Positions 36,301 to 64,000 of a stretch of DNA of 64,000 nucleotides are shown piece by piece. Origin of the DNA: Anthoceros angustus (Eukaryota > Plantae > Anthocerotophyta); assembly GCA_010909165.1 (NCBI GenBank), contig VJWM01000019.1, positions 1-64,000 on the forward strand, written 5' to 3'. Within the stretch, counting starts at the first letter, position 1. Each line of letters opens with the position of its first letter. Under the pieces are notes generated by a model. The model saw only the letters and a program-made list of their open reading frames with translations. It did no database searches and was not told the DNA's origin. Position numbers and translations under genes: made by a program.

Positions 36301-37537
36301 GAAGGATGTCATTCCAAGTGAGGGTCATTATGTTGTAAGATTAAGAAAAATTGGACCCAAGTGAAGATTATTGCATTAGAAAGTTAAATTGTTGTAAGTA
36401 GCTACTATTCTAAATTTGGAGCATAGTGTAATAGTAGTATTCTAAGCATAATAATAACATAAAATGAACAATACTATAGTTAGCTCATGGCCCTTTATAA
36501 AGGTTTAGCGGCCTAGAATTCATAAGAAACACTGTACTATAGTTAGCTCATGGCCCTTTATAAAGGTTTGGCCTAGTATTCAAAAGTTCTATGCGTTAGC
36601 TCATGTGTTTCGTTCTTCACTTGTGGTGTAAAGTATATCTCAACATCAAGATATTATATGTTTTGTGTCCTATATATTTTGCTACGTGTCGACTTTATGT
36701 GTTTGCTCCACACTTGTCGCATAAAGCATATCTCAACAACGTATGAAAAGATTATAATTGCATCACCTATATTTGAAGATATACATGTATTAGCTCTTCA
36801 ATTGAGCCTACTTGGAGATCATAGCTCTTTAATTGAGCCTACTTGGAGATCATAGCTCTTTAATTGAGTTTACCCGGAGATAGATTAGGAAGGATGTCAT
36901 TCCAAGTGAGGGTCATTATGTTGTAAGATTAAGAAAAATTGGACCCAAGTGAAGATTATTGCATTAGAAAGTTAAATTGTTGTAAGTAGCTACTATTCTA
37001 AATTTGGAGCATAGTGTAATAGTAGTATTCTAAGCATAATAATAACATAAAATGAACAATACTATAGTTAGCTCATGGCCCTTTATAAAGGTTTAGCGGC
37101 CTAGAATTCATAAGAAACACATACTATAGTTAGCTCATGGCCCTTTATAAAGGTTTGGCCTAGTATTCAAAAGTTCTATCGTTAGCTCATGTGTTTCGTT
37201 CTTCACTTGTGGTGTAAAGTATATCTCAACATCAAGATATTATATGTTTTGTGTCCTATATATTTTGCTACGTGTCGACTTTATGTGTTTCGTTCCACAC
37301 TTGTCGCATAAAGCATATCTCAACAACGTATGAAAAGATTATAATTGCATCACCTATATTTGAAGATATACATGTATTAGCTCTTCAATTGAGCCGCCAC
37401 GATTACTAGCTTTTAATTGAGTTTACCCGGAGATAGTAGGTCCTCCATTAAAGATTCTTCTCTAGCTTATTAATAAGCTTTCAATACCAATATATTGGAC
37501 TTGTTATATTGGTACTTGTGGAGTGAACAATTCACGA

Positions 37538-42218: not shown

Positions 42219-43510
42219 ATGAAGATAACAAACTCATCAACTTCGAGAGTTCGGAAGAGGATACAATATCCGGTTCTCCACACTCGATTCCAAAACCAAT
42301 CACATACTCAAGATGGCCGAGTGGTCCTTTACGTGCACCTCAATGTCTTCCGACGATTTCCCCTTCCAACAGCTTGAAGCAAAAGAGTCGGGATATGGGT
42401 GGTCAGATGCACCCATGCCTTGGCCGGGTCCAAACGACATGTGGATGTGGAAAAGTTTCGTAAGCCTCAAAACGTGATCCATATTGGGCGAGTAGATCTT
42501 TGACCGCTCCACTAGCGTTTTGCAAGAATAGCGAAAGGAGCAAGACCTTTAAGAGCAAGGAAGCATTCGCAGATATATGAAAAGAAAATTATCCGAATTA
42601 GATGTGGATGATTTTTCTTATCTTTCAATGGAAAAGTGCCTATCAAAATTGAAGTTGACGACTCTATTGATAATCGGAGAGAAGACAAAGATAAAGTCGA
42701 CATCGAATACAAAGCATCATCAAGACTTACTTTGTGTGGACTCACTTCTTAATGAATCGACATCGGCGACTTTGGAAAAGTCATATGTACAAGAAGGAAG
42801 AGGAAGACTCGATGACGCAGATGCGGATTTGAAGCGTTTTCAGTGCAAAGTTCATGTCAACATCCTCATCTTTGAAGAGGTCGCTCACGAGTCCAACCAC
42901 TAATGATTTTGAGAGCAAGAAAACCGCGAAAAACCTAGACAATTTGCAAAGAAACCTCTTGTAGAGCCATCGCCTTCCCAAGAAGGTAGCTTGCCTCAAG
43001 CAAGTCTTGTGCGGTGGATACGGTGGTGAAGCCGCCATCTTACCTTCTCGCCTATTTCAAGGAGGCTCATGGCGAGCCTGTGACCGTGGTCTCGGAGCCG
43101 CTTATGAAAGAAATGTTTTGGGCTTGGTATGGTCGGGAGAGAATATGTTTGAAGACAGCATGGAAATAACAGAGGATGCCTACATCAAAAACATTTGGAC
43201 TGCCAGAGACTATGAAGTGGTGTGCAAACAATGGATACGAGGAACCAAAGGCGCCTAGCTTGGAGGAAGCATCTAGATGCGTGAAGATGTTGGTGAGAAA
43301 ATCTTCAATCAATGACATAGATTATAATCCCGAGGTGGAAGTAGATGAGGACGCAATCAAGACGTGGATGATGATGTACATGAAGAACACGAACAATCGG
43401 ATAAAGACTTTAGTAATGGAGAAAATGTAGGTATTAAGACCGATGAGCAATTGGAGGAAGACTTAAATATCAAAGAGGGTTTTCACATTCATGGAAGACT
43501 TAAATTATGA
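42219..43510 (+). CDS. Array gene copy 5
   Basis: ORF pieces 42176..42463, 42577..42903 and 43176..43430. Confidence 0.7.
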
Positions 43511-46500
43511 AGTACACCGACCAAGACTTAAGTAATGAAGAAGATATTGATGAAGAATTAAATGATGGAGAAGATTGTGACAAAGACTTTAAGTAATGAA
43601 GAAGATTTTGAGGAAGACTTTAGTGATTGAAAGAGATTCGATGAAGACTCAAGTAATTAAGGAGACACTCACGAATTCATGATGAAGTCAAGGTCGAGTA
43701 TGAAGCATTGTACAATGAATGATAAAATATTGATCTAAGGAATATGTACGAGGTATGCATAAGGACAAGAACAAAAGTTTGACCGTTTATAGCTTTTGCG
43801 ATGGAGTTGGCCACGCGCACATGTATGGCTCTTTGTCCTTACTTACTTGGCCTGGAGTTCCGGTGAACCCTAAGCCCACGAAGGGGTAGGAGCTACAAAC
43901 AAGAATTGCAAGGGCTCCTCATGAGCGGATGGAAGAAATTATTCATGAGCATGGATGGCATGCTCGATGGAGGCTAGGTGGCAAGCTTGTGAGTTCAACC
44001 TATCCCACTTGCGTTGTGTATGGACACCGCCTACTTACATTCCCTTCATTGGCTGCCTTTTTGCTTCCTACAGAAAGCCCTTTGAAACAGTCCGATCTCC
44101 GATAAATTGTCGCCACGCTTTAGAATTGCAACCGAGCCCATGATGGGGTGTGTTCGACGATCCTCTTGTACCTCACTTGCTTTCCTCTTTCATTACCACG
44201 TTTCCAAAACCTAACACCTTGATTGTCCTTGGCGTGTGCTCCCCAAAGAAAGAAAAGGAGGAGGGAATAGCGCTAGCTTGGAGGCTACAAAGGTCTTCTC
44301 GACAGCCCATCTCACCTCCTCCATGCTCGTATGCGATGCTCAATCGATGTAGGAATTCAAAATATAGGAATCCGGACGACGCATCCGGGTGATGTCACCG
44401 CAAGTTACTTTGTGATAGCTAGATTGATGATGGTAGACATAGTTACTATTTGGAACCTCACTTGGAGGCTACAATAGAGGGATGGTGGATTGCTCCATAT
44501 GCGACAATCGAAATGATGTGTTGAGACATGTGTAAGAGCATGGTTAATTAGTTTTAATTGTACGACAAATGACATGATAGGTTGAGACATGTACAAGAGC
44601 ATGCACAATTTGGATAAATGACATGATATGTTGAGACATGTATAAGAGCATGCCTAATTTGTTTTAATTATATGATAAATGTATATTTTTCCCCAAGAGG
44701 AATGGAAAACCTATAACAACGATACAATACAAAGAATCAAGAGTGTTCTACAAAGAATCAAGAGTGTTTTCCGTTGGTACGGTCTAGGTGTCACTTTCTC
44801 CCCAAGAGGGAATGGAAAACCTATAACAACGATACAATACAAAGAATCAAGAGTGTTCTTGTTGGTACGGTCTAGGTGTCACGTTAAGATAAAGATCACA
44901 AGACCGAGGCCACGCGCACATGTATGGCTCTTTGTCCTTACTTACTTGGCCTGGAGTTCCGGTGAACCCTAAGCCCACGAAGGGGTAGGAGCTACAAACA
45001 AGAATTGCAAGGGCTCCTCATGAGCGGATGGAAGAAATTATTCATGAGCATGGATGGCATGCTCAAGATGGAGGCTAGGTGGCAAGCTTGTGAGTTCAAC
45101 CTATCCCACTTGCGTTGTGTATGGACACCGCCTACTTACATTCCCTTCATTGGCTGCCTTTTTGCTTCCTACAGAAAGCCCTTTGAAACAGTCCGATCTC
45201 CGATAAATTGTCGCCACGCTTTAGAATTGCAACCGAGCCCATGATGGGGTGTGTTCGACGATCCTCTTGTACCTCACTTGCTTTCCCTCTTTCATTACCA
45301 CGCTTCCAAAACCTAACACCTTGATTGTCCTTGGCGTGTGCTCCCCAAAGAAAGAAAAGGAGGAGGGAATAGCGCTAGCTTGGAGGCTACAAAGGTCTTC
45401 TCGACAGCCCATCTCACCTCCTCCATGCTCGTATGCGATGCTCAATCGATGTAGGAATTCAAAATATAGGAATCGGACGACGCATCCGGGTGATGTCACG
45501 CAAGTTACTTTGTGATAGCTAGATTGATGATGGTAGACATAGTTACTATTTGGAACCTCACTTGGAGGCTACAATAGAGGGATGGTGGATTGCTCCATAT
45601 GCGACAATCGAAATGATGTGTTGAGACATGTGTAAGAGCATGGTTAATTAGTTTTAATTGTACGACAAATGACATGATAGGTTGAGACATGTACAAGAGC
45701 ATGCACAATTTGGATAAATGACATGATATGTTGAGACATGTATAAGAGCATGCCTAATTTGTTTTAATTATATGATAAATGTATATTTTTCCCCAAGAGG
45801 GAATGGAAAACCTATAACAACGATACAATACAAAGAATCAAGAGTGTTCTACAAAGAATCAAGAGTGTTTTCCGTTGGTACGGTCTAGGTGTCACTTTCT
45901 CCCCAAGAGGGAATGGAAAACCTATAACAACGATACAATACAAAGAATCAAGAGTGTTCTTGTTGGTACGGTCTAGGTGTCACGTTAAGATAAAGATCAC
46001 AAGACCGAGGCCACGAGCTCGAAATTGCATGCTACTTGGTTCTTGCGAGTCACGGTGTCGACTTCAAGCAATACCATGCCATAGTGAGGAAGATGATAAA
46101 AGACCACAAAGATCGACGAAATGATGATGATGTCGTGTCACGCGCATATGACCTCGGCGACCACGCCTCGGTGAGGGTTAGAGCCTCACCATGCTTGTAA
46201 GATGTCTTGGAGCAAAACGTGTTGAAGTAGGACCGGAGAGAAGACGAAGATGAAGTCATTGTCGGATAATGAATGACAACATACACGTACTAGTCGTATG
46301 AAAATATTAGGATTACATTGCATATACTTAAAGAGAGAGCTTAATATAAGCGTCTTAATTGAGCCTACTTGGAGATCATAGCTCTTTAATTGAGCTTGGT
46401 CGATACGGTAGCTTACTCGAGATAGATTAGGAAGGATGTCATTCCAAGTGAGGGTCATTATGTTGTAAGATTAAGAAAAATTGGACCCAAGTGAAGATTA

Positions 46501-47080
46501 TTGCATTAGAAAGTTAAATTGTTGTAAGTAGCTACTATTCTAAATTTGGAGCATAGTGTAATAGTAGTATTCTAAGCATAATAATAACATAAAATGAACA
46601 ATACTATAGTTAGCTCATGGCCCTTTATAAAGGTTTAGCGGCCTAGAATTCATAAGAAACACACTATAGTTAGCTCATGGCCCTTTATAAAGGTTTGGCG
46701 GCCTAGTATTCAAAAGTTCTATGCGTTAGCTCATGTGTTTCGTTCTTCACTTGTGGTGTAAAGTATATCTCAACATCAAGATATTATATGTTTTGTGTCC
46801 TATATATTTTGCTACGTGTCGACTTTATGTGTTTCGTTCCACACTTGTCGATAAAGCATATCTCAACAACGTATGAAAAGATTATAATTGCATCACCTAT
46901 ATTTGAAGATATACATGTATTAGCTCTTCAATTGAGCACCTTCGATTACTAGCTTTTAATTGAGTTTACCCAGAGATAGTAGGTCCTCCATTAAAGATTC
47001 TTCTCTAGCTTATTAATAAGCTTTCAATACCAATATATTGGACTTGTTATATTGGTACTTGTGGAGTGAACAATTCACGA

Positions 47081-48367
47081 ATGAAGATAACAAACTCATC
47101 AACTTCGAGAGTTCTAAGAGGATACAATATCCGGTTCTCCACACTCGATTCCAAAACCAATCACATACTCAAGATGGCGAGTGGTCCTTTACGTGCACCT
47201 CAATGTCTTCCGACGATTTCCCTTCCAACAGTTGAAGCAAAAGAGTCGGGATATGGGTGGTCAGATGCACCCATGCCTTGGCCGGGTCCAAACGACATGT
47301 GGATGTGGAAAAGTTTCGTAAGCCTCAAAACGTGATCCATATTGGGCGAGTAGATCTTTGACCGCTCCACTAGCGTTTTGCAAGAATAGCGAAAGGAGCA
47401 AGACCTTTAAGAGCAAGGAAGCATTCGCAGATATATGAAAAGAAAATTATCCGTAATTAGATGTGGATGATTTTTCTTATCTTTTCAATGGAAAGTGCCT
47501 ATCAAAATTGAAGTTGACGACTCTATTGATCGGAGAGAAGACAAAGATAAAGTCGACATCGAATACAAAGCATCATCAAGACTTACTTTGTGTGGACTCA
47601 CTTCTTAATGAATCGACATCGGCGACTTTGGAAAAGTCATATGTACAAGAAGGAAGAGGAAGACTCGATGGCAGATGCGGATTTGAAGCGTTTTCGGTGC
47701 AAAGTTCATGTCAACATCCTCATCTTTGAAGAGGTCGCTCACGAGTCCAACCACGGTAATGATTTTGAGAGCAAGAAAACCGCGAAAAACCTAGACAATT
47801 TGCAAAGAAACCTCTTGTAGAGCCATCGCCTTCCCAAGAAGGTAGCTTGCCTCAAGCAAGTCTTGTGCGGGTGGATACGGTGGTGAAGCCGCCATCTTAC
47901 CTTCTCGCCTATTTCAAGGAGGCTCATGGCGAGCCTGACCGTGGTCTCTGGAGCCGCTTATGAAAGAAATGTTTTGGGCTTGGTATGGTCGGGAGAGAAT
48001 ATGTTTGAAGACAGGCATGGAAATAACAGAGGATGCCTACATCAAAAACATTTGGACCGCCAGAGACTATGAAGTGGTGTGCAAACAATGGATACGAGGA
48101 ACCAAAGGCGCCTAGCTTGGAGGAAGCATCTAGATGCGTGAAGATGTTGGTGAGAAAATCTTCAATCAATGACATAGATTATAATCCCGAGGTGGAAGTA
48201 GATGAGGACGCAATTCAAGACGTGGATGATGATGTACATGAAGAACACGAACAATCGGATAAAGACTTTAGTAATGGAGAAAATGTAGGTATTAAGATGA
48301 TGAGCAATTGGAGGAAGACTTAAATATCAAAGAGGGTTTTCACATTCATGGAAGACTTAAATTATGA
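47081..48367 (+). CDS. Array gene copy 6
   Basis: ORF pieces 47066..47335, 47463..47729 and 48033..48323. Confidence 0.7.
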
Positions 48368-50859
48368 AGTACACCGACCAAGACTTAAGTAATGAAGAAG
48401 ATATTGATGAAGAATTAAATGATGGAGAAGATTGTGACAAAGACTTAAGTAATGAAGAAGATTTTGAGGAAGACTTTAGTGATTGAAAGAGATTCGATGA
48501 AGACTCAAGTAATTAAGGAGACACTCACGAATTCATGATGAAGTCAAGGTCGAGTATGAAGCATTGTACAATGAATGATAAAATATTGATCTAAGGAATA
48601 TGTACGAGGTATGCATAAGGACAAGAACAAAAGTTTGACCGTTTATAGCTTTTGCGATGGAGTTGGCCACGCACATGTATGGCTCTTTGTCCTTACTTAC
48701 TTGGCCTGGAGTTCCGGTGAACCCTAAGCCCACGAAGGGGTAGGAGCTACAAACAAGAATTGCAAGGGCTCCTCATGAGCGGATGGAAGAAATTATTCAT
48801 GAGCATGGATGGCATGCTCGATGGAGGCTAGGGTGGCAAGCTTGTGAGTTCAACCTATCCCACTTGCGTTGTGTATGGACACCGCCTACTGACATTCCCT
48901 TCATTGGCTGCCTTTTTGCTTCCTACAGAAAGCCCTTTGAAACAGTCACCGATCTCCGGATAAATTGTCGCCACGCTTTAGAATTGCAACCGAGCCCATG
49001 ATGGGGTGTGTTCGACGATCCTCTTGTACCTCACTTGCTTTCCCTCTTTCATTACCACGCTTCCAAAACCTAACACCTTGATTGTCCTTGGCGTGTGCTC
49101 CCCAAAGAAAGAAAAGGAGGAGGGAATAGCGCTAGCCTCGAGCTGCAAAGGTCTTCTCGACAGCCCATCTCACCTCCTCCATGCTCTGTATGCGATGCTC
49201 AATCAGATGTAGGAATTCAAAATATAGGAATCTGGGACGTACGCATCTGGGTGATGTCACTGCAAGTTACTTTGTGATAGCTAGATTGATGATGGTAGAC
49301 ATAGTTACTATTTGGAACCTCACTTGGAGGCTATAAAAGAGGGATGGTGGATTGCTCCATATGCAGCACAATCGAAATGATGTGTTGAGACATGTGTAAG
49401 AGCATGGTTAATTAGTTTTAATTGTACGACAAATGACATGATAGGTTGAGACATGTACAAGAGCATGCACAATTTGGATAAATGACATGATATGTTGAGA
49501 CATGTATAAGAGCATGCCTAATTTGTTTTAATTATATGATAAATGTATATTTTTCCCCAAGAGGGAATGGAAAACCTATAACAACGATACAATACAAAGA
49601 ATCAAGAGTGTTCTACAAAGAATCAAGAGTGTTTTCCGTTGGTACGGTCTAGGTGTCACTTTCTCCCCAAGAGGGAATGGAAAACCTATAACAACGATAC
49701 AATACAAAGAATCAAGAGTGTTCTTGTTGGTACGGTCTAGGTGTCACGTTAAGATAAAGATCACAAGACCGAGGCCACTGAGCTCGAAATTGCATGCTAC
49801 TTGGTTCTTGCGAGTCACGGTGCGCACGACTTCAAGCAATACCATGCCATAGTGAGGAAGATGATAAAAGACCACAAAGATCGACGAAATGATGATGATG
49901 TCGTGTCACGCGCGCATATGACCTCGAGCAAGACCACGCCTCGGTGAGGGTTAGAGCCTCACCATGCTTGTAAGATGTCTTGGAGCAAAACGTGTTGAAG
50001 TAGGACACGGAGAGAAGACGAAGATGAAGTCATTGTCGGATAATGAATGACAACATACACGTACTAGTCGTATGAAAATATTAGGATTACATTGCATATA
50101 CTTAAAGAGAGAGCTTAATATAAGCGTCTTAATTGAGCCTACTTGGAGATCATAGCTCTTTAATTGAGCTTGGTCGATACGGTAGCTTACTCGAGATAGA
50201 TTAGGAAGGATGTCATTCCAAGTGAGGGTCATTATGTTGTAAGATTAAGAAAAATTGGACCCAAGTGAAGATTATTGCATTAGAAAGTTAAATTGTTGTA
50301 AGTAGCTACTATTCTAAATTTGGAGCATAGTGTAATAGTAGTATTCTAAGCATAATAATAACATAAAATGAACAATACTATAGTTAGCTCATGGCCCTTT
50401 ATAAAGGTTTAGCGGCCTAGAATTCATAAGAAACACTGTACTATAGTTAGCTCATGGCCCTTTATAAAGGTTTGGCGGCCTAGTATTCAAAAGTTCTATG
50501 CGTTAGCTCATGTGTTTCGTTCTTCACTTGTGGTGTAAAGTATATCTCAACATCAAGATATTATATGTTTTGTGTCCTATATATTTTGCTACGTGTCGAC
50601 TTTATGTGTTTCGCTCCACACTTGTCGCATAAAGCATATCTCAACAACGATGAAAAGATTATAATTGCATCACCTATATTTGAAGATATACATGTATTAG
50701 CTCTTCAATTGAGCCTACTTGGAGATCATAGCTCTTTAATTGAGTTTACCCGAGATAGTAGGTCCTCCATTAAAGATTCTTCTCTAGCTTATTAATAAGC
50801 TTTCAATACCAATATATTGGACTTGTTATATTGGTACTTGTGGAGTGAACAATTCACGA

Positions 50860-52155
50860 ATGAAGATAACAAACTCATCAACTTCGAGAGTTCTAAGAGG
50901 ATACAATATCCGTTCTCCACACTCGATTCCAAAACCAATCACATACTCAAGATGGCCGAGTGGTCCTTTACGCACCTCAATGTCTTCCAGACGATTTCCC
51001 CTTCCAACAGCTTGAAGCAAAAGAGTCGGGATATGGGTGGTCAGTATGCACCCATGCCTTGGCCGGTCCAAACGACATGTGGATGTGGAAAGTTTCTGGT
51101 AAGCCTCAAAAACGTGATCCATATTGGGCGAGTAGATCTTTGACTGCTCCACTAGCATTTTACAAGAATAGCGAAAGGAGCAAGATCTTTAAGAGCAAGG
51201 AAAGCATTCGCAGATATATGAAAGAAAATTATCCAGAATTAGATGTGGATGATTTTTTCTTATCTTTTCAATGGAAAGTACCTATCAAAATTGAAGTTGA
51301 CGAACTATTGATACTGGAGAGAAGACAAAGATAAAGTCAACGTCAAATACAAAGCATCAGCAAGACTTACTTTGTGTGGACTCACTTCTTAATGAATCGA
51401 CATCGGCGCCTTTGGAAAAGTCATATGTACAGCAAGGAAGAGGAAGACTCGATGACGCAGATGCGGATTTGAAGCGTTTTTCAGGTGCAAAGTTCATGTC
51501 AACATCCTCATCTTTGAAGAGGTCGCTCACAGAGTCCAACCACAGTAATGATTTTGAGAGCAAGAAAACCGCGAAAAAACCTAGACAATTTGCAAAGAAA
51601 CCTCTTGTAGAGCCATCGCCTTCCCAAGAAGGTAGCTTGCCTCAAGCAAGTCTTGTGCGGGTGGATACGGTGGTGAAGCCGCCATCTTACCTTCTCTCGC
51701 CTATTTCAAGGAGGCTCATGGCGAGCCTGACCGTGGTCTCTGGAGCCGCTTAAAAGAAATGTTTTGGGCTTGGTATGGTCGGGAGAGAATATGTTTGAAG
51801 ACATGGAAATAACAGAGGATGCCTACATCAAAAACATTTGGACTGCCAGAGACTATGAAGTGGTGTGCAAACAATGGATACGAGGAACCAAAGGCGCCTA
51901 GCTTGGAGGAAGCATCTAGATGCGTGAAGATGTTGGTGAGAAAATCTTCAATCAATGACATAGATTATAATCCCGAGGTGGAAGTAGATGAGGACGAATT
52001 ATCAAGACGTGGATGATGATGTACATGAAGAACACGAACAATCGGATAAAGACTTTAGTAATGGAGAAAATGTAGGTATTAAGACCGATGAGCAATTGGA
52101 GGAAGACTTAAATATCAAAGAGGGTTTTCACATTCATGGAAGACTTAAATTATGA
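50860..52155 (+). CDS. Array gene copy 7
   Basis: ORF 50960..51334 (KVSGKPQKRDPYWASRSLTAPLAF...FQWKVP) and ORF 51376..51753 (...PISRRLM). Confidence 0.75.
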
Positions 52156-55100
52156 AGTACACCGACCAAGACTTAAGTAATGAAGAAGATATTGATGAAG
52201 AATTAAATGATGGAGAAGATTGTGACAAAGACTTTAAGTAATGAAGAAGATTTTGAGGAAGACTTTAGTGATTGAAAGAGATTCGATGAAGACTCAAGTA
52301 ATTAAGGAGACACTCACGAATTCATGATGAAGTCAAGGTCGAGTATGAAGCATTGTACAATGAATGATAAAATATTGATCTAAGGAATATGTACGAGGTA
52401 TGCATAAGGACAAGAACAAAAGTTTGACCGTTTATAGCTTTTGCGATGGAGTTGGCCACGCGCACATGTATGGCTCTTTGTCCTTACTTACTTGGCCCTG
52501 TGGAGTTCCGGTGAACCCTAAGCCCACGAAGGGGGTAGGAGCTACAAACAAGAATTTCAAGGGCTCCTCATGAGCGGATGGAAGAAATTATTCATGAGCA
52601 TGGATGGCATGCTCAGTATGGAGGCTAGGGTGGCAAGCTTGTGAGTTCAACCTATCCCACTTGCGTTGTGTATGGACACCGCCTACTTCGTACATTCCCT
52701 TCACTGGCTGCCTTTTTTTGCTTCCTACAGGAAAGCCCTTTGAAACAGGTCACTGATCTCCAGATAAATTGTCGTCACGCTTTAGAATTTGCAACCGAGC
52801 CCATGATGGGGTGTGTTCTGACGATCCTCTTGTACCTCACTTGCTTTCCCTCTTTCAGTACAACGTTTCCAAAACCTAACACCTTGATTGTCCTTGGCAG
52901 TGTGCTCCCCCGAGCAAAGAAAAGGAGGAGGGGAATAGCGCTAGCTGCCTGAGCTGCAAAGGTCTTCTCGACAGCCCATCTCACCTCCTCCATGCTCGTA
53001 TGCGATGCTCAATCGGATGTAGGAATTCAAAATATAGGAATCCGGACGACGCATCCGGGTGATGTCACGCAAGTTACTTTGTGATAGCTAGATTGATGAT
53101 GGTAGACATAGTTACTATTTGGAACCTCACTTGGAGGCTACAATAGAGGGATGGTGGATTGCTCCATATGCGACAATCGAAATGATGTGTTGAGACATGT
53201 GTAAGAGCATGGTTAATTAGTTTTAATTGTACGACAAATGACATGATAGGTTGAGACATGTACAAGAGCATGCACAATTTGGATAAATGACATGATATGT
53301 TGAGACATGTATAAGAGCATGCCTAATTTGTTTTAATTATATGATAAATGTATATTTTTCCCCAAGAGGAATGGAAAACCTATAACAACGATACAATACA
53401 AAGAATCAAGAGTGTTCTACAAAGAATCAAGAGTGTTTTCCGTTGGTACGGTCTAGGTGTCACTTTCTCCCCAAGAGGAATGGAAAACCTATAACAACGA
53501 TACAATACAAAGAATCAAGAGTGTTCTTGTTGGTACGGTCTAGGTGTCACGTTAAGATAAAAGATCACAAGATCGAGGCCACTGAGCTCGAAATTGCATG
53601 CTACTTGGTTCTTGCGAGTCACGGTGTCGACTTCAAGCAATACCATGCCATAGTGAGGAAGATGATAAAAGACCACAAAGATCGACGAAATGATGATGAT
53701 GTCGTGTCACGCGTGCATATGACCTCGAAAGCAAGTACCACGCCTCGGTGAGGGTTAGAGCCTCACCATGCTTGTAAGATGTCTTGGAGCAAAACGTGTT
53801 GAAGTAGGACACGGAGAGAAGACGAAGATGAAGTCATTGTCGGATAATGAATGACAACATACACGTACTAGTCGTATGAAAATATTAGGATTACATTGCA
53901 TATACTTAAAGAGAGAGCTTAATATAAGCGCCTTAATTGAGCCTACTTGGAGATCATAGCTCTTTAATTGAGCCTACTTGGAGATCATAGCTCTTTAATT
54001 GAGTTTACCCGGAGATAGATTAGGAAGGATGTCATTCCAAGTGAGGGTCATTATGTTGTAAGATTAAGAAAAATTGGACCCAAGTGAAGATTATTGCATT
54101 AGAAAGTTAAATTGTTGTAAGTAGCTACTATTCTAAATTTGGAGCATAGTGTAATAGTAGTATTCTAAGCATAATAATAACATAAAATGAACAATACTAT
54201 AGTTAGCTCATGGCCCTTTATAAAGGTTTAGCGGCCTAGAATTCATAAGAAACACTGTACTATAGTTAGCTCATGGCCCTTTATAAAGGTTTGGCGGCCT
54301 AGTATTCAAAAGTTCTATGCGTTAGCTCATGTGTTTCGTTCTTCACTTGTGGTGTAAAGTATATCTCAACATCAAGATATTATATGTTTTGTGTCCTATA
54401 TATTTTTCCCAAGAGGGAATGGAAAACCTATAACAACGATACAATACAAAGAATCAAGAGTGTTCTACAAAGAATCAAGAGTGTTTTCCGTTGGTACGGT
54501 CTAGGTGTCACTTTCTCCCCAAGAGGGAATGGAAAACCTATAACAACGATACAATACAAAGAATCAAGAGTGTTCTTGTTGGTACGGTCTAGGTGTCACG
54601 TTAAGATAAAAGATCACAAGATCGAGGCCACTGAGCTCGAAATTGCATGCTACTTGGTTCTTGCGAGTCACGGTGTCGACTTCAAGCAATACCATGCCAT
54701 AGTGAGGAAGATGATAAAAGACCACAAAGATCGGCGAAATGATGATGTCGTGTCACCGCGCATATGACCTCGGCGGTACCACGCCTCGGTGAGGGTTAGA
54801 GCCTCACCATGCTTGTAAGATGTCTTGGAGCAAAACGTGTTGAAGTAGGACCGGAGAGAAGACGAAGATGAAGTCATTGTCGGATAATGAATGACAACAT
54901 ACACGCATTAGTCGTATGAAAATATTAGGATTACATTGCATATACTTAAAGAGAGAGCTTAATATAAGCGTCTTAATTGAGCCTACTTGGAGATCATAGC
55001 TCTTTAATTGAGCTTGGTCGGTAGCTTACTCGAGATAGATTAGGAAGGATGTCATTCCAAGTGAGGGTCATTATGTTGTAAGATTAAGAAAAATTGGACC

Positions 55101-55697
55101 CAAGTGAAGATTATTGCATTAGAAAGTTAAATTGTTGTAAGTAGCTACTATTCTAAATTTGGAGCATAGTGTAATAGTAGTATTCTAAGCATAATAATAA
55201 CATAAAATGAACAATACTATAGTTAGCTCATGGCCCTTTATAAAGGTTTAGCGGCCTAGAATTCATAAGAAACACTGTACTATAGTTAGCTCATGGCCCT
55301 TTATAAAGGTTTGGCGGCCTAGTATTCAAAAGTTCTATGCGTTAGCTCATGTGTTTCGTTCTTCACTTGTGGTGTAAAGTATATCTCAACATCAAGATAT
55401 TATATGTTTTGTGTCCTATATATTTTGCTACGTGTCGACTTTATGTGTTTCGTTCCACACTTGTCGCATAAAGCATATCTCAACAACGTATGAAAAGATT
55501 ATAATTGCATCACCTATATTTGAAGATATACATGTATTAGCTCTTCAATTGAGCCTACTTGGAGATCATAGCTCTTTAATTGAGTTTACCCAGATAGTAG
55601 GTCCTCCATTAAAGATTCTTCTCTAGCTTATTAATAAGCTTTCAATACCAATATATTGGACTTGTTATATTGGTACTTGTGGAGGAACAATTCACGA

Positions 55698-56996
55698 ATG
55701 AAGATAACAAACTCATCAACTCGAGAGTTCGGAAGAGGATACAATATCCGTTCTCCACACTCGATTCCAAAACCAATCACATACTCGAAGATGGCCAGAG
55801 TGGTCCTTTACGTGCACCTCAATGTCTTCCAGACGATTTCCCCCTTCCAACAGTTGAAGCAAAAGAGTCAGGATATGGGTGGCCATATGCACCCATGCCT
55901 TGGCCGGGTCCAAACGACATGTGGATGTGGAAAGTTTCTGGTAAGCCTCAAAAACGTGATCCATATTGGGCGAGTAGATCTTTGACTGCTCCACTAGCGT
56001 TTTGCAAGAATAGCGAAAAGAGCAAGACCTTTAAGAGCAAGGAAAGCATTCGCAGATATATGAAAGAAAATTATCCAGAATTAGATGTGGATGATTTTTT
56101 CTTATCTTTTCAATGGAAAGTGCCTATCAAAATTGAAGTTGACGACTCTATTGATCGGAGAGAAGACAAAGATAAAGTCGACATCGAATACAAAGCATCA
56201 TCAAGACTTACTTTGTGTGGACTCACTTAATGAATCGACATCGGCGACTTTGGAAAAGTCATATGTACAAAGAAGGAAGAGGAAGACTCGATGACGCAGA
56301 TGCGGATTTGAAGCGTTTTGTGCAAAGTTCATGTCAACATCCTCATCTTTGAAGAGGTCGCTCACAGAGTCCAACCACGGTAATGATTTTGAGAGCAAGA
56401 AAACCGAAAAACCTAGACAATTTGCAAAGAAACCTCTTGTAGAGCCATCGCCTTCCCAAGAAGGTAGCTTGCCTCAAGCAAGTCTTGTGCGGGTGGATAC
56501 GGTGGTGAAGCCGCCATCTTACCTTCTCCGCCTATTTCAAGGAGGCTCATGGCGAGCCTGTGACCGTGGTCTCTGGAGCCGCTTAAAAGAAATGTTTTGG
56601 GCTTGGTATGGTCGGGAGAGAATATGTTTGAAGACAGGCATGGAAACAACAGAGGATGCCTACATCAAAAACATTTGGACTGCCAGAGAGACTATGAAGT
56701 GGTGTGCAAACAATGGATACGAGGAACCAAAGGCGCCTAGCTTGGAGGAAGCATCTAGATGCGTGAAGATGTTGGTGAGAAAATCTTCAATCAATGACAT
56801 AGATTATAATCCTGAGGTGGAAGTAGATGAGGACGCAATTACTGAAGACGTGGATAATGATGTACATGAAGAACACGAACAATCGGATAATGGCTTTAGT
56901 AATGGAGAAAATGTAGGTATTAAGGCTGATGAGCAATTGGAGGAAGACTTAAATATCCAAGAGGGTTTTCAAATTCATGGAAGACTTAAATTATGA
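55698..56996 (+). CDS. Array gene copy 8 (complete N-terminal domain in one frame, ~55831-56125)
   Basis: ORF 55670..56230 gives the whole DUF7081-like domain. ORF 56331..56996 gives WYGRERICLKTGME...IKN...WCANNG plus the acidic tail. Confidence 0.8.
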
Positions 56997-57160
56997 AGTA
57001 CACCGGACCAAGACTTAAGTAATGAAGAAGATATTGATGAAGAATTAAATGATGGAGAAGATTGTGACAAAGACTTTAAGTAATGAAGAAGATTTTGAGG
57101 AAGACTTTAGTGATTGAAAGAGATTCGATGAAGACTCAAGTAATTAAGGAGACACTCACG
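56860..57160 (+). repeat. 30-bp coding minisatellite (acidic decapeptides, e.g. DQDLSNEEDI/DEELNDGEDC/DKDLSNEEDF), present in every unit
   Basis: GAAGAC(T)TTAAGTAATGAAGAAGAT-type motifs recur at ~30-bp spacing. Coordinates are given for copy 8. Confidence 0.85.
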
Positions 57161-59463
57161 AATTCATGATGAAGTCAAGGTCAGTATGAAGCATTGTACA
57201 ATGAATGATAAAATATTGATCTAAGGAATATGTACGAGGTATGCATAAGGACAAGAACAAAAGTTTGACCGTTTATAGCTTTTGCGATGGAGTTGGCCAC
57301 GCACATGTATGGCTCTTTGTCCTTACTTACTTGGCCTGCGGAGTTCGGTGAACCCTAAGCCCACGAAGGGGTAGGAGCTACAAACAAGAATTGCAAGGGC
57401 TCCTCATGAGCGGATGGAAGAAATTATTCATGAGCATGGATGGCATGCTCGATGGAGGCTAGGGTGGCAAGCTTGTGAGTTCAACCTATCCCACTTGCGT
57501 TGTGTATGGACACCGCCTACTGACATTCCCTTCATTGGCTGCCTTTTTGCTTCCTGAAAGCCCTTTGAAACAGTCACCGATCTCCGGATAAATTGTCGCC
57601 ACGCTTTAGAATTGCAACCGAGCCCATGATGGGGTGTGTTCGACGATCCTCTTGTACCTCACTTGCTTTCCCTCTTTCATTACCACGCTTCCAAAACCTA
57701 ACACCTTGATTGTCCTTGGCGGTGCTCCCCAAAGAAAGAAAAGGAGGAGGAATAGCGCTAGCTGCAAAGGTCTTCTCGACAGCCCATCTCACCTCCTCCA
57801 TGCTCGTATGCGATGCTCAATCGATGTAGGAATTCAAAATATAGGAATCCGGACGACGATCCGGGTGATGTCACCGCAAGTTACTTTGTGATAGCTAGAT
57901 TGATGATGGTAGACATAGTTACTATTTGGAACCTCACTTGGAGGCTACAATAGAGGGATGGTGGATTGCTCCATATGCAGACAATCGAAATGATGTGTTG
58001 AGACATGTGTAAGAGCATGGTTAATTAGTTTTAATTGTCGACAAATGACATGATAGGTTGAGACATGTACAAGAGCATGCACAATTTGGATAAATGACAT
58101 GATATGTTGAGACATGTATAAGAGCATGCCTAATTTGTTTTAATTATACGATAAATGTATATTTTTCCCCAAGAGGGAATGGAAAACCTATAACAACGAT
58201 ACAATACAAAGAATCAAGAGTGTTCTACAAAGAATCAAGAGTGTTTTCCGTTGGTACGGTCTAGGTGTCACTTTCTCCCCAAGAGGGAATGGAAAACCTA
58301 TAACAACGATACAATACAAAGAATCAAGAGTGTTCTTGTTGGTACGGTCTAGGTGTCACGTTAAGATAAAGATCACAAGATCGAGGCCACTGAGCTCGAA
58401 ATTGCATGCTACTTGGTTCTTGCGAGTCACGGTGCGACTTCAAGCAATACCATGCCATAGTGAGGAAGATGATAAAAGACCACAAAGATCGAAATGATGA
58501 TGATGTCGTGTCACCGCGCATATGACCTCGAGCGTACCACGCCTCGGTGAGGGTTAGAGCCTCACCATGCTTGTAAGATGTCTTGGAGCAAAACGTGTTG
58601 AAGTAGGACATCGGAGAGAAGACGAAGATGAAGTCATTGTCGGATAATGAATGATGACAACATACACGTACTAGTCGTATGAAAATATTAGGATTACATT
58701 GCATATACTTAAAGAGAGAGCTTAATATAAGCGTCTTAATTGAGCCTACTTGGAGATCATAGCTCTTTAATTGAGCTTGGTCGATACGGTAGCTTACTCG
58801 AGATAGATTAGGAAGGATGTCATTCCAAGTGAGGGTCATTATGTTGTAAGATTAAGAAAAATTGGACCCAAGTGAAGATTATTGCATTAGAAAGTTAAAT
58901 TGTTGTAAGTAGCTACTATTCTAAATTTGGAGCATAGTGTAATAGTAGTATTCTAAGCATAATAATAACATAAAATGAACAATACTATAGTTAGCTCATG
59001 GCCCTTTATAAAGGTTTAGCGGCCTAGAATTCATAAGAAACACTGTACTATAGTTAGCTCATGGCCCTTTATAAAGGTTTGGCGGCCTAGTATTCAAAAG
59101 TTCTATGCGTTAGCTCATGTGTTTCGTTCTTCACTTGTGGTGTAAAGTATATCTCAACATCAAGATATTATATGTTTTGTGTCCTATATATTTTGCTACG
59201 TGTCGACTTTATGTGTTTCGTTCCACACTTGTCGATAAAGCATATCTCAACAACGTATGAAAAGATTATAATTGCATCACCTATATTTGAAGATATACAT
59301 GTATTAGCTCTTCAATTGAGCCTACTTGGAGATCATAGCTCTTTAATTGAGTTTACCCAGATAGTAGGTCCTCCATTAAAGATTCTTCTAGCTTATTAAT
59401 AAGCTTTCAATACCAATATATTGGACTTGTTATATTGGTACTTGTGGAGTGAACAATTCACGA

Positions 59464-60758
59464 ATGAAGATAACAAACTCATCAACTTCGAGAGTTCGGA
59501 AGAGGATACAATATCCGGTTCTCCACACTCATTCCAAAACCAATCACATACTCGAAGATGGCGAGTGGTCCTTTACGCACCTCAATGTCTTCCGACGATT
59601 TCCCCTTCCAACAGCTTGAAGCAAAAGAGTCGGGATATGGGTGGTCAGATGCACCCATGCCTTGGCCGGGTCCAAACGACATGTGGATGTGGAAAAGTTT
59701 CGTAAGCCTCAAAAACGTGATCCATATTGGGCGAGTAGATCTTTGACGCTCCACTAGCGTTTTGCAAGAATAGCGAAGGAGCAAGACCTTTAAGAGCAAG
59801 GAAGCATTCGCAGATATATGAAAAGAAAAATTATCCGAATTAGATGTGGATGATTTTTCTTATCTTTCAATGGAAAGTGCCTATCAAAATTGAAGTTGAC
59901 GACTCTATTGATAATCGGAGAGAAGACAAAGATAAAGTCGACATCGAATACAAAGCATCATCAAGACTTACTTTGTGTGGACTCACTTCTTAATGAATCG
60001 ACATCGGCGACTTTGGAAAAGTCATATGTACAAGGAAGAGGAAGAGGAAGACTCGATGACGCAGATGCGGATTTGAAGCGTTTTCAGTGCAAAGTTCATG
60101 TCAACATCCTCATCTTTGAAGAGGTCGCTCACGAGTCCAACCACGGTAATGATTTTGAGAGCAAGAAAACCGAAAAACCTAGACAATTTGCAAAGAAACC
60201 TCTTGTAGAGCCATCGCCTTCCCAAGAAGGTAGCTTGCCTCAAGCAAGTCTTGTGCGGGTGGATACGGTGGTGAAGCCGCCATCTTACCTTCTCGCCTAT
60301 TTCAAGGAGGCTCATGGCGAGCCTGTGACCGTGGTCTCTGGAGCCGTTGCGAAAAGAAATGTTTTGGGCTTGGTATGGTCTTTGGGAGAGAATATGTTTG
60401 AAGACAGGCATGGAAATAAGAGGATGCCTACATCAAAAACATTTGGACTGCCAGAGACTATGAAGTGGTGTGCAAACAATGGATACGAGGAACCAAAGGC
60501 GCCTAGCTTGGAGGAAGCATCTAGATGCGTGAAGATGTTGGTGAGAAAATCTTCAATCAATGACATAGATTATAATCGAGGTGGAAGTAGATGAGGACGC
60601 AATATCAAGACGTGGATGATGATGTACATGAAGAACACGAACAATCGGATAAAGACTTTAGTAATGGAGAAAATGTAGGTATTAAGACCGATGAGCAATT
60701 GGAGGAAGACTTAAATATCAAAGAGGGTTTTCACATTCATGGAAGACTTAAATTATGA
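59464..60758 (+). CDS. Array gene copy 9
   Basis: ORF pieces 59421..59705 and 59890..60594. Confidence 0.7.
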
Positions 60759-62548
60759 AGTACACCGGACCAAGACTTAAGTAATGAAGAAGATATTGAT
60801 GAAGAATTAAATGATGGAGAAGATTGTGACAAAGACTTTAAGTAATGAAGAAGATTTTGAGGAAGACTTTAGTGATTGAAAGAGATTCGGATGAAGACTC
60901 AAGTAATTAAGGAGACACTCACGAATTCATGATGAAGTCAAGGTCGAGTATGAAGCATTGTACAATGAATGATAAAATATTGATCTAAGGAATATGTACG
61001 AGGTATGCATAAGGACAAGAACAAAAGTTTGACCGTTTATAGCTTTTGCGATGGAGTTGGCCACGCGCACATGTATGGCTCTTTGTCCTTACTTACTTGG
61101 CCTGGAGTTCCGGTGAACCCTAAGCCCACGAAGGGGTAGGAGCTACAAACAAGAATTGCAAGGGCTCCTCATGAGCGGATGGAAGAAATTATTCATGAGC
61201 ATGGATGGCATGCTCGATGGAGGCTAGGGTGGCAAGCTTGTGAGTTCAACCTATCCCACTTGCGTTGTGTATGGACACCGCCTACTGTACATTCCCTTCA
61301 TCGGCTGCCTTTTTGCTTCCTACAGAAAGCCCTTTGAAACAGTCACCGATCTCCGGATAAATTGTCGTCACGCTTTAGAATTGCAACCGAGCCCATGATG
61401 GGGTGTGTTCGACGATCCTCTTGTACCTCACTTGCTTTCCCTCTTTCATTACCACGCTTCCAAAACCTAACACCTTGATTGTCCTTGGCGTGTGCTCCCC
61501 AAAGAAAGAAAAGGAGGAGGGAATAGCGCTAGCTGAGCTGCAAAGGTCTTCTCGACAGCCCATCTCACCTCCTCCATGCTCGTATGCGATGCTCAATCGA
61601 TGTAGGAATTCAAAATATAGGAATCGGACGACGATCCGGGTGATGTCACCGCAAGTTACTTTGTGATAGCTAGATTGATGATGGTAGACATAGTTACTAT
61701 TTGGAACCTCACTTGGAGGCTACAATAGAGGGATGGTGGATTGCTCCATATGCAGACAATCGAAATGATGTGTTGAGACATGTGTAAGAGCATGGTTAAT
61801 TAGTTTTAATTGTACGACAAATGACATGATATGTTGAGACATGTACAAGAGCATGCACAATTTGGATAAATGACATGATATGTTGAGACATGTATAAGAG
61901 CATGCCTAATTTGTTTTAATTATACGATAAATGTATATTTTTCCCCAAGAGGGAATGGAAAACCTATAACAACGATACAATACAAAGAATCAAGAGTGTT
62001 CTACAAAGAATCAAGAGTGTTTTCCGTTGGTACGGTCTAGGTGTCACTTTCTCCCCAAGAGGGAATGGAAAACCTATAACAACGATACAATACAAAGAAT
62101 CAAGAGTGTTCTTGTTGGTACGGTCTAGGTGTCACGTTAAGATAAAGATCACAAGATCGAGGCCACTGAGCTTGAAAATTGCATGCTACTTGGTTCTTGC
62201 GAGTCACGGTGTCGACTTCAAGCAATACCATGCCATAGTGAGGAAGATGATAAAAGACCACAAAGATCGACGAAATGATGATGATGTCGTGTCACCGCGC
62301 ATATGACCTCGGCAAGACCACGCCTCGGTGAGGGTTAGAGCCTCACCATGCTTGTAAGATGTCTTGGAGCAAAACGTGTTGAAGTAGGACACTGGAGAGA
62401 AGACGAAGATGAAGTCATTGTCGGATAATGAATGACAACATACACGTACTAGTCGTATGAAAATATTAGGATTACATTGCATATACTTAAAGAGAGAGCT
62501 TAATATAAGCGTCTTAATTGAGCCTACTTGGAGATCATAGCTCTTTAA

Positions 62549-62947
62549 TTGAGCTTGGTATGGTCTGGAGAGAATATGTTTGAAGACAGCATGGAAATAA
62601 CAGAGGATGCCTACATCAAAAACATTTGGACCGCCAGAGAGACTATGAAGTGGTGTGCAAACAATGGATACGAGGAACCAAAGGCGCCTAGCTTGGAGGA
62701 AGCATCTAGATGCGTGAAGATGTTGGTGAGAAAATCTTCAATCAATGACATAGATTATAATCCCGAGGTGGAAGTAGATGAGGACGCAATTATCAAGACG
62801 TGGATGATGATGTACATGAAGAACACGAACAATCGGATAAAAGACTTTAGTAATGGAGAAAATGTAGGTATTAAGACCGATGAGCAATTGGAGGAAGACT
62901 TAAATATCAAAGAGGGTTTTCACATTCATGGAAGACTTAAATTATGA
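62549..62947 (+). pseudogene. 3'-part copy of the array gene (5' part deleted at the GCTTGGT junction, ~62553)
   Basis: Spacer sequence TTAATTGAGCTTGGT joins directly to ATGGTC...GAGAATATGTTTG within the U-box region. Confidence 0.75.
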
Positions 62948-64000
62948 AGTACACCGACCAAGACTTAAGTAATGAAGAAGATATTGATGAAGAATTAAAT
63001 GATGGAGAAGATTGTGACAAAGACTTTAAGTAATGAAGAAGATTTTGAGGAAGACTTTAGTGATTGAAAGAGATTCGGATGAAGACTCAAGTAATTAAGG
63101 AGACACTCACGAATTCATGATGAAGTCAAGGTCGAGTATGAAGCATTGTACAATGAATGATAAAATATTGATCTAAGGAATATGTACGAGGTATGCATAA
63201 GGACAAGAACAAAAGTTTGACCGTTTATAGCTTTTGCGATGGAGTTGGCCACGCACATGTATGGCTCTTTGTCCTTACTTACTTGGCCTGGAGTTCCGGT
63301 GAACCCTAAGCCCACGAAGGGGTAGGAGCTACAAACAAGAATTGCAAGGGCTCCTCATGAGCGGATGGAAGAAATTATTCATGAGCATGGATGGCATGCT
63401 CGATGGAGGCTAGGGTGGCAAGCTTGTGAGTTCAACCTATCCCACTTGCGTTGTGTATGGACACCGCCTACTTCAGACATTCCCTTCATTGGCTGCCTTT
63501 TTGCTTCCTACAGAAAGCCCTTTGAAACAGTCACCGATCTCCGGATAAATTGTCGCCACGCTTTAGAATTGCAACCGAGCCCATGATGGGGTGTGTTCGA
63601 CGATCCTCTTGTACCTCACTTGCTTTCCCTCTTTCATTACCACGTTTCCAAAACCTAACACCTTGATTGTCCTTGGCGTGTGCTCCCCAAAGAAAGAAAA
63701 GGAGGAGGGAATAGCGCTGAGCTGCAAAGGTCTTCTCGACAGCCCATCTCACCTCCTCCATGCTCGTATGCGATGCTCAATCGATGTAGGAATTCAAAAT
63801 ATAGGAATCCGGACGACGATCCGGGTGATGTCACCGCAAGTTACTTTGTGATAGCTAGATTGATGATGGTAGACATAGTTACTATTTGGAACCTCACTTG
63901 GAGGCTACAATAGAGGGATGGTGGATTGCTCCATATGCAGACAATCGAAATGATGTGTTGAGACATGTGTAAGAGCATGGTTAATTAGTTTTAATTGTAC

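What the first reader, a model, noticed from the sequence alone, without database searches (positions are those of the whole stretch)
55698..56996. Apparently novel domain fusion: DUF7081/MBD-like domain + U-box E3 ligase + acidic repeat tail
Seen: the consensus built from copies 3, 7 and 8 reads ...LPTVEAKESGYGWPYAPMPWPGPNDMWMWKVSGKPQKRDPYWASRSLTAPLAFCKNSEKSKTFKSKESIRRYMKENYPELDVDDFFLSFQWKVP... It continues through a low-complexity linker, then PPSYLLCPISRRLMAEPVTVVSGA(A/Y)ERNVLGLWYGRxERICLKTGMEITEDAYIKNIWTARETMKWCANNG, then a D/E-rich tail. Established: the second block fits the plant U-box consensus (CPIS-LM-DPV-SG-TYER-W-CP-T-PN-WC). Plant PUBs usually pair the U-box with ARM, kinase, WD40 or TPR domains. 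From memory, the first block matches the N-terminal domain of plant OBERON-like proteins (PYAP-WP-GD-W-W...F-SK-Y...F-F-WKIP; DUF7081). Its KTFKSKESIRRY motif recalls the KxFRSKxE(L)xRY motif of methyl-CpG-binding domains. Inference: a nuclear, DNA- or chromatin-targeted ubiquitin ligase with a histone-binding or DNA-mimic acidic tail. I do not know this architecture from any described family.
Basis: partly seen in the sequence, partly recalled or inferred. Interest (0 to 1): 0.85.

Follow-up and report, generated by a model that had tools for sequence, protein, structure and literature searches.

The report
Tandem-array gene fusing DUF7081 and U-box
A plant genome holds a head-to-tail array of a 3.76-kb repeat whose only recognisable gene joins an MBD-like chromatin-type domain (DUF7081) to a U-box ubiquitin-ligase domain, a pairing I found in no other protein. 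Every copy reads as broken in this very noisy assembly, so whether any copy works is open.

Summary
Window 23.3-64 kb is a tandem array of a 3.76-kb unit (94-98% identical), with further fragments at 1-2942. Each full unit carries one intronless reading path of about 434 codons: DUF7081 (Pfam E 3.8e-25 in one frame of copy 8), a 127-residue linker, a U-box and a 67-residue acidic tail.

The U-box is unbroken in no copy. Joined from copies 3 and 8 with XXX at the break, it passes Pfam's threshold (23.4 vs 21.4 bits) and matches the solved PUB12 and PUB14 U-boxes end to end (E 7e-6).

Every copy has 9-27 frame switches. Indels are about as frequent as substitutions, equally in ORF and spacer, which points to assembly noise rather than decay. 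Intactness therefore cannot be judged.

DUF7081 is weakly but consistently MBD-like: MeCP2 MBD tops the structure comparison at Z 4.4, and MBD-type chains fill ranks 2-7 of 48,161.

None of the 125 DUF7081 cluster representatives has a U-box. The nearest relatives are bryophyte-type OBERON-like genes. I rate it a lineage-specific new domain combination of uncertain function.

Earlier notes report other gene-bearing arrays and the same noise elsewhere in this genome, but not this gene.

The parts
23325..64000 (+). Tandem array of a ~3.76-kb unit, about 11 units, some truncated or rearranged; it runs off the window's end
   Evidence: blastn of unit 55001-58800 against the window: 94-98% identity, period about 3.76 kb
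55698..56996 (+). Copy 8 of the array's ORF (the finding): ATG to stop, read through 9 frame switches
   Evidence: the tiled path of 434 codons has no stop
55865..56125 (+). DUF7081 core (ESGYGW...WKVP), intact in one frame in copy 8
   Evidence: PF23299 E 3.8e-25; family alignment A1; AlphaFold model with pLDDT 83; coordinates
56126..56504 (+). Ser/Lys-rich linker of about 127 residues with a basic stretch (KKTxKKPRQFAKKP) that looks like a nuclear localisation signal
   Evidence: no Pfam hit; the localisation-signal reading is inference
56505..56717 (+). U-box region in copy 8; the N-half is out of frame here and the C-half (from KEMFW, 56583) is in frame
32823..32900 (+). U-box N-half (VKPPSYLLCPISRRLMAEPVTVVSGA), in frame in copy 3
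   Evidence: PF04564 E 3.4e-4, 21.1 bits, profile 2-23
56793..56993 (+). Acidic C-terminal tail: 67 residues, 22 D/E, 3 K/R, no repeats
24549..25849 (+). ORF copy 1 (20 frame switches); contains the in-frame start MKIINSS... through the first half of DUF7081
28251..29539 (+). ORF copy 2 (27 frame switches)
31984..33311 (+). ORF copy 3 (15 frame switches)
37509..39736 (+). Rearranged copy 4: ORF positions 1-988 are joined at 38481-38488 to ORF positions 64-1327
42190..43510 (+). ORF copy 5 (22 frame switches)
47052..48367 (+). ORF copy 6 (22 frame switches)
50831..52155 (+). ORF copy 7 (14 frame switches); 428 nt in frame from the linker into the U-box
59435..60758 (+). ORF copy 9 (22 frame switches)
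62549..62947 (+). Partial copy: U-box C-half and tail only
1500..2942 (-). Inverted partial unit holding ORF positions 1-811 (91% identity), next to a plus-strand unit fragment at 1-1501

Best explanation
Shown: the array's unit carries one intronless gene of about 434 codons that arose in this plant lineage by domain shuffling. Its parts are the N-terminal DUF7081 exon of a bryophyte-type OBERON-like gene, a new Ser/Lys-rich linker, a U-box of the ARM-PUB type (closest to PUB12/13/14) and a short acidic tail. The gene was then amplified together with its 3.76-kb unit.

Inferred: if expressed, the U-box would recruit a ubiquitin-charged E2. The MBD-like DUF7081 would place the enzyme on DNA or chromatin or on a chromatin partner, in the way UHRF1 and the plant VIM/ORTH proteins combine a DNA-mark reader with an E3 domain.

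Inferred: most of the many frame breaks are base-calling or polishing errors of the assembly, not mutations. The copies may therefore be much more intact than they read, but this cannot be decided from the window.
For: Domains:
- DUF7081 scores E 3.8e-25, with all invariant columns present.
- The joined U-box is above Pfam's threshold over the whole profile. It aligns end to end with the solved PUB12 U-box (7xed_C, E 7.3e-6) and AtPUB14 U-box (1t1h, E 2.6e-5). The XXX falls on the T-Y-E motif.

One ORF:
- In-frame stretches from different copies overlap and tile 434 codons without a stop or a conflict.
- All nine copies are collinear over 1.3 kb.

Origin:
- The window's domain sits in a 97/91-supported clade with Physcomitrium patens XP_024384987 and four assembly-derived proteins.
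- The two I looked up (P0004, P0040) are followed by PHD_Oberon after an AG|GTAATA donor 8-12 codons past the WKxP motif.

Noise:
- Indels run at 14.4 per kb against 16.1 substitutions per kb in the ORF. In the spacer the figures are 12.3 against 16.0.
- Some copies show 4-7 substitutions but 14-17 indels.
- There are 98 indel events, many at hot spots with several states and no tree-like sharing.
- Earlier notes on the same genome report the same noise, and in one case RNA that reads through breaks seen in the assembly (not checked by me).

MBD-like fold.
Against: - No single copy has an intact ORF or an intact U-box, and the majority consensus is still frameshifted.
- There is no sign of purifying selection among copies: 8 synonymous against 20 non-synonymous changes, and codon positions 12/19/22. 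Power is low.
- The domain has a very long branch, 1.3 against a median of 0.37.
- It has Pro at the family's near-invariant Arg.
- The U-box has Leu and Lys where PUBs have the conserved prolines of CP and PN.
- No relative of the fusion, the linker or the tail turned up in the protein collections, so there is no evidence of conservation or expression.
- The MBD match has a low Z (at most 4.4), and Foldseek alone found nothing significant.
Confidence: 0.55

Rival explanations
1. The array is a dead satellite-like amplicon. A chimeric ORF was made once by retroposition, transposon capture or illegitimate recombination of gene fragments. It was amplified as part of a repeat and has decayed neutrally since, so no copy encodes a protein.
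For: - Every copy is broken, and so is the consensus.
- Indels are as frequent in the ORF as in the spacer.
- The synonymous to non-synonymous ratio is about neutral.
- The branch is long and conserved Arg and Pro residues are lost.
- The gene is intronless whereas its relatives are spliced.
- The setting is transposon-rich, with a copia island at 15.5-19 kb.
- No homologue exists elsewhere.
Against: - An indel-to-substitution ratio near 1 is far above what real sequence divergence usually shows (roughly one indel per ten substitutions, from general knowledge). Twenty frameshifts beside 5-10 substitutions in copies 96-98% alike is hard to get by mutation.
- The tiled path keeps 434 codons free of stops, and all fold-defining residues of DUF7081 are kept.
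- No transposon protein or other domain lies in the unit.
Confidence: 0.33
2. The array itself, or the domain junction, is an assembly artefact: an over-expanded or mis-joined repeat. The fusion does not exist in the plant.
For: Several units are truncated or joined at odd points (34.8-38.5 kb, 44.9 kb, 54.0-55.0 kb). Earlier notes suspect artefactual walks in other arrays of this genome.
Against: The DUF7081-linker-U-box order is the same in nine copies that differ by their own substitutions. It spans only 1.3 kb, well within a single long read. In-frame stretches of single copies cross both junctions (38778-39095 and 51301-51750).
Confidence: 0.05
3. The gene is real and active, but DUF7081 is a protein-protein adaptor with no role on DNA or chromatin. 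The ligase would then be an ordinary cytoplasmic PUB with a new substrate-binding head.
For: - The window's domain lacks the near-invariant Arg. By my motif alignment recalled from memory, that Arg would correspond to an MBD arginine finger.
- The MBD fold match is weak.
- Some MBD-fold domains (SETDB, MBD5/6) bind proteins rather than methylated DNA (general knowledge).
Against: In its other known settings DUF7081 sits next to the Oberon PHD finger, a chromatin-linked module. The linker has a basic stretch like a nuclear localisation signal.
Confidence: 0.07

Closest known systems
Plant U-box (PUB) E3 ligases of the ARM-repeat class (PUB12/13, AtPUB14)
   Same: The U-box aligns over the whole 70-75 residue domain with the solved PUB12 (7xed_C) and AtPUB14 (1t1h) U-boxes. 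It shares the CPIS...M.EPV..SG...W and WC..NG motifs.
   Different: There are no ARM repeats or any other known PUB partner domain, and the U-box lies near the C-terminus after DUF7081. It has CL for CP and KN for PN in the second loop region. It is unbroken in no copy.
OBERON-like proteins (DUF7081 + PHD_Oberon + DUF7615 coiled coil)
   Same: The N-terminal DUF7081 is of the same family, and the window's domain groups with the bryophyte-type members.
   Different: The PHD finger and coiled coil are replaced by a linker, a U-box and an acidic tail. The gene is intronless, multi-copy and very fast-evolving.
UHRF1 and plant VIM/ORTH proteins (SRA methyl-DNA reader + PHD + RING E3)
   Same: The proposed logic is the same: a DNA- or chromatin-mark reader fused to a ubiquitin-ligase domain (general knowledge; a functional analogy only).
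Methyl-CpG-binding domains (MeCP2, MBD1-4, AtMBD6) and the BAZ2A TAM domain
   Same: The predicted DUF7081 core superposes on nearly the whole MBD: 5bt2_A at Z 4.4, rmsd 4.1 A, 69 of 71 residues, 17% identity. MBD-type chains take ranks 2-7, 9, 16, 19 and 23 of 48,161. Three of 61 relatives give weak Pfam MBD hits.
   Different: There is no Pfam MBD hit for the window's domain and the Z scores are low. DUF7081 has an extra N-terminal GxGxPYAPxxWP segment and a longer hairpin. The position of the second arginine finger is not conserved in the family, and the window has Pro at the first (residue equivalence inferred from memory).
Marchantia polymorpha V-chromosome YR1 repeats with the ORF162 gene family
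   Same: A protein-coding gene is co-amplified with a kilobase-scale repeat unit into many copies in a liverwort. From my memory of Okada et al. 2001, ORF162 has a RING-finger motif and male-organ expression.
   Different: No sequence comparison was possible. ORF162 is a far shorter protein (162 residues, going by its name). The sex linkage and expression of the present array are unknown.

Membership tests
DUF7081 (PF23299) | Pfam score above the gathering cut-off | tested here: met
   88.7 bits against 27, E 3.8e-25, profile 2-95 of 96, in a single frame of copy 8; copy 7 gives E 2.5e-17
DUF7081 (PF23299) | Family-invariant and near-invariant residues | tested here: met
   All 10 invariant columns are present (G33 G35 P37 P44 W50 W52 R68 P73 F112 W114). 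Of the near-invariant columns, only R58 is missing (Pro).
U-box (PF04564) | Pfam score above the gathering cut-off over the whole domain | tested here: inconclusive
   Met only for a join of two copies with XXX at the break: 23.4 against 21.4 bits, profile 2-70 of 73. The best single-copy piece gives 21.2 bits. The C-half alone gives no hit.
U-box (PF04564) | Similarity to solved U-box domains | tested here: met
   PUB12 7xed_C at E 7.3e-6, AtPUB14 1t1h at E 2.6e-5 and 7c96_B at E 0.003, all over the full domain (joined sequence)
U-box (PF04564) | Conserved E2-contact residues (Ile of CPI; Pro of the CP.T loop; PN) | tested here: inconclusive
   CPI is present, but CP is replaced by CL and PN by KN. 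The effect on E2 binding is unknown.
U-box (PF04564) | E2-dependent ubiquitin-ligase activity | not testable with these tools
   Needs an in vitro ubiquitination assay
MBD (PF01429) | Pfam MBD match | tested here: not met
   No MBD hit for the window's domain at E up to 5. Three of 61 relatives give sub-threshold hits, best 0.0061.
MBD (PF01429) | MBD fold (beta sheet followed by a helix) | tested here: inconclusive
   The top structural matches are MBDs, but at Z 2.6-4.4 with rmsd 3.3-4.3 A. Foldseek gives E above 1.
MBD (PF01429) | Arginine fingers and the Asp/Tyr that read methyl-CpG | not tested
   Only a motif alignment recalled from memory. It suggests the first Arg is Pro in the window and the second is not conserved in DUF7081.
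OBERON / OBERON-like proteins | Oberon-type PHD finger (PF07227) and C-terminal coiled coil (PF24590) | tested here: not met
   No such hit in any piece of the ORF or the unit. Both are present in the relatives.

The most novel reading that the evidence does not exclude
The copies are largely intact in the living plant and are expressed, giving a lineage-specific, ampliconic family of chromatin-targeted U-box ligases whose MBD-like head reads DNA or nucleosomes. It would be a plant parallel to UHRF1/VIM built from different folds. Like Marchantia's ORF162 repeats, it might be tied to a sex chromosome or to the germ line. As a by-product, DUF7081 of the land-plant OBERON-like proteins would be recognised as a divergent MBD-type domain.
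Probability: 0.2. Interest if true: 0.7.

Novelty: new variant of a known kind. Interest (0 to 1): 0.45.

Why it matters
U-box ligases get their targets from the domain fused to the U-box, and the catalogued plant partners are ARM, kinase, WD40, TPR and cyclophilin domains. A partner of chromatin-reader type would be a new way to aim ubiquitination at chromatin in plants.

The side result may have wider use. DUF7081, which heads the OBERON-like proteins of land plants, looks like a divergent methyl-CpG-binding-type domain. That gives a testable idea for an uncharacterised domain.

The case also shows how a gene-bearing repeat in a noisy long-read assembly can look like a pseudogene field when it may not be one.

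Tried and rejected
- The majority consensus of ten copies is still frameshifted, so it gives no clean ORF.
- Pfam and PDB searches of the U-box C-half alone found nothing.
- The search for homologous proteins with the 233-residue C-terminal piece and the 186-residue N-terminal piece found nothing. Its length window (up to 408 and 325 residues) would miss a full-length 434-residue relative.
- The profile search with full-length DUF7081 proteins listed only OBERON-like proteins among the 120 rows shown of 404. It therefore does not by itself exclude a U-box partner lower down.
- Foldseek against the PDB gave no significant match.
- The PDB sequence search with the DUF7081 profile hit only designed propeller proteins, through a short WxxKxG motif, which I take as chance.
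- Codon-position and synonymous/non-synonymous counts showed no signal and have low power.
- Other ORFs of the unit have no Pfam domain, and the window has no Rfam match.
- tblastn did not recover the degenerate DUF7081-like stretch noted by another reader at 6731-7012 at E 1e-3.
- Literature searches for DUF7081, for OBERON-like protein and for plant U-box with methyl-CpG-binding domain described neither the domain nor the fusion.

Full report
**What is there**

A 3.76-kb unit is repeated head to tail from 23325 to the end of the window at 94-98% identity. A plus-strand fragment lies at 1-1501 and an inverted partial unit at 1500-2942. A transposon-rich island sits between these and the array.

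A 1.3-kb stretch of each full unit is collinear in nine copies plus fragments. The finding's coordinates (55698-56996) run from an ATG ('MKITNSS') to a stop shared by all copies.

**The two domains**

In copy 8 the N-terminal block is intact in one frame and is a clear DUF7081: PF23299, E 3.8e-25, 88.7 bits against a cut-off of 27. In an alignment with 60 family members, all ten invariant columns are present. One near-invariant Arg is Pro in the window.

The U-box is never unbroken.
- The N-half of copy 3 (32823-32900) scores 21.1-21.2 bits, just below Pfam's 21.4.
- The C-half of copy 8 (56583-56741) gets no hit on its own.
- Joined with XXX at the break, the two halves score 23.4 bits over profile positions 2-70 of 73.
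- The join aligns end to end with the solved U-boxes of PUB12 (7xed_C, E 7.3e-6) and AtPUB14 (1t1h, E 2.6e-5). The XXX falls on their T-Y-E.

The DNA alignment explains the break. The few bases between 'SGA' and 'KEMFW' have lengths of 4, 5, 7, 7 and 8 in different copies, never a multiple of three. The frame that fits the family is KEMFWAWYGRERICLKTG. Compared with PUBs, the domain has CL for CP and KN for PN.

**One reading path**

In-frame stretches taken from five copies overlap without conflict and tile 434 codons without a stop. The order is:
- start and DUF7081;
- a 127-residue Ser/Lys-rich linker with a basic stretch;
- the U-box;
- a 67-residue tail with 22 D/E and no repeats.

Single copies read in frame across the DUF7081-linker junction (38778-39095) and the linker-U-box junction (51301-51750). 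There is no intron. The rest of the unit has no Pfam domain and no Rfam match.

**Broken copies or a noisy assembly**

Relative to the tiled path, every copy has 9-27 frame switches, and the majority consensus is still frameshifted. The pattern is not that of ordinary decay.
- Indel events are about as common as substitutions: 14.4 against 16.1 per kb in the ORF and 12.3 against 16.0 per kb in the spacer.
- Some copies have 4-7 substitutions but 14-17 indels.
- Many of the 98 indel events sit at hot spots that show several states shared in a non-tree-like way.
- From general knowledge, real divergence gives roughly one indel per ten substitutions.

Earlier notes on this genome call it liverwort-like and error-ridden, and report one case in which RNA reads through breaks seen in the assembly. 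I did not check those notes, but my counts agree with them.

I conclude that intactness cannot be judged here. Counts of synonymous against non-synonymous changes (8 against 20) and of codon positions (12/19/22) show no purifying selection among copies, with little power.

**Where the parts came from**

A full scan of 1.84 billion cluster representatives with the DUF7081 piece gave 125 hits, the best at 40-48% identity. Their architectures are DUF7081 alone, two DUF7081 domains plus a coiled coil, or DUF7081 + PHD_Oberon + DUF7615 (the OBERON-like proteins).

None of them has a U-box:
- Pfam on the 69 longer ones gave PHD_Oberon in 29, DUF7615 in 21 and U-box in 0.
- A local phmmer and motif search on all 125 also found none.

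In a tree, the window's domain falls in a 97/91-supported clade with a Physcomitrium patens protein and four assembly-derived proteins. Its end branch is 1.3, against a median of 0.37. Two of these relatives lie on contigs where the DUF7081 exon ends at an AG|GTAATA donor 8-12 codons after WKxP and a PHD_Oberon exon follows.

The simplest history is that the head exon of an OBERON-like gene was joined to new sequence ending in a PUB-type U-box, and that the chimera was then amplified with its unit. Word-based searches with both halves found no close relative, and literature searches found no description.

**Is DUF7081 MBD-like?**

The AlphaFold model of the domain (mean pLDDT 83, core above 90) has a small sheet followed by two helices.
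- Foldseek found nothing significant, although MeCP2 appeared three times in its top 25.
- An all-against-representatives comparison put MBD-type chains at ranks 2-7, 9, 16, 19 and 23 of 48,161. These were an MBD NMR structure, MeCP2, MBD4, MBD2, SETDB2, MBD1, AtMBD6 and BAZ2A. Z was 2.6-4.0, and nearly the whole MBD was aligned.
- In the second-look comparison the top four were all MeCP2, the best being 5bt2_A at Z 4.4, rmsd 4.1 A, 69 of 71 residues and 17% identity.
- Pfam MBD is the only second family hit by more than one DUF7081 member (3 of 61, best E 0.006). The window's own domain does not hit it.

Each line is weak, but together they make a distant MBD-type fold likely; I put it at about two in three. 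By a motif alignment recalled from memory, the family's near-invariant Arg would match the first arginine finger of MeCP2, which is Pro in the window. The second finger position is not conserved in DUF7081. Canonical methyl-CpG reading is therefore doubtful.

**How it would work**

- Shown: the domain identities and their order in one reading path.
- Inferred: the U-box binds a charged E2, and the MBD-like head and the basic linker bring the protein to DNA, nucleosomes or a chromatin partner. The acidic tail could bind histones or fold back on the basic parts. This is the logic of UHRF1 and VIM/ORTH with different folds.
- Alternative: the main rival is a dead, neutrally drifting amplicon.

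A precedent for a gene co-amplified with its repeat exists on the Marchantia V chromosome (the ORF162 family). Earlier notes mention other gene-bearing arrays in this same genome.

**Verdict**

This is a real and, as far as I could search, uncatalogued domain combination: a new variant of the plant U-box ligase theme, in a lineage-specific tandem array. Whether any copy is intact or expressed cannot be told from this assembly. I rate the interest as moderate.

Noticed in passing
window 3100-23300: A transposon-rich island interrupts the array. It holds a Ty1/copia element with gag at 15499-15975 (Retrotran_gag_2, E 1e-19) and an integrase SH3-like domain at 17296-17859 (E 5e-24). Its polyprotein is cut into ORFs of under 190 residues, consistent with either decay or the same assembly noise.
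   Followed up: partly
window 34836-38488, 44908, 53957-55020: Several units are truncated or joined at odd points. At 38481-38488, ORF position 988 abuts ORF position 64, so one ORF (38298-38699) reads a U-box fragment followed by DUF7081. These could be real rearrangements or assembly walks through the repeat.
   Followed up: no
window 56973-57152 and 58083-58360 (and the same places in each unit): Short internal tandem repeats of about 60-65 bp lie inside the unit. One set starts just before the ORF's stop and another lies in the spacer.
   Followed up: no
window 6731-7012: A degenerate DUF7081-like stretch flagged by another first-stage note. By eye, fragments resemble the G.G..P..P...DKW and SFQWKIP motifs in different frames, but tblastn with the array's domain did not find it at E 1e-3.
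   Followed up: partly
window 24549-60758 (ORF copies): Indel hot spots take three to five different states across copies at the same site, for example the bases between 'SGA' and 'KEMFW' and the site at CTTCTC(..)GCC. Why these sites are error-prone was not tested; base modification or mis-polishing between copies are possibilities.
   Followed up: no
L001 334-1777 and L002 1932-5731: Two public assembly contigs from unnamed samples (SRR18067352, SRR31511108) carry bryophyte-type OBERON-like genes with DUF7081, PHD_Oberon and (in L002) DUF7615 exons. The DUF7081 exon ends at an AG|GTAATA donor shortly after WKxP.
   Followed up: partly
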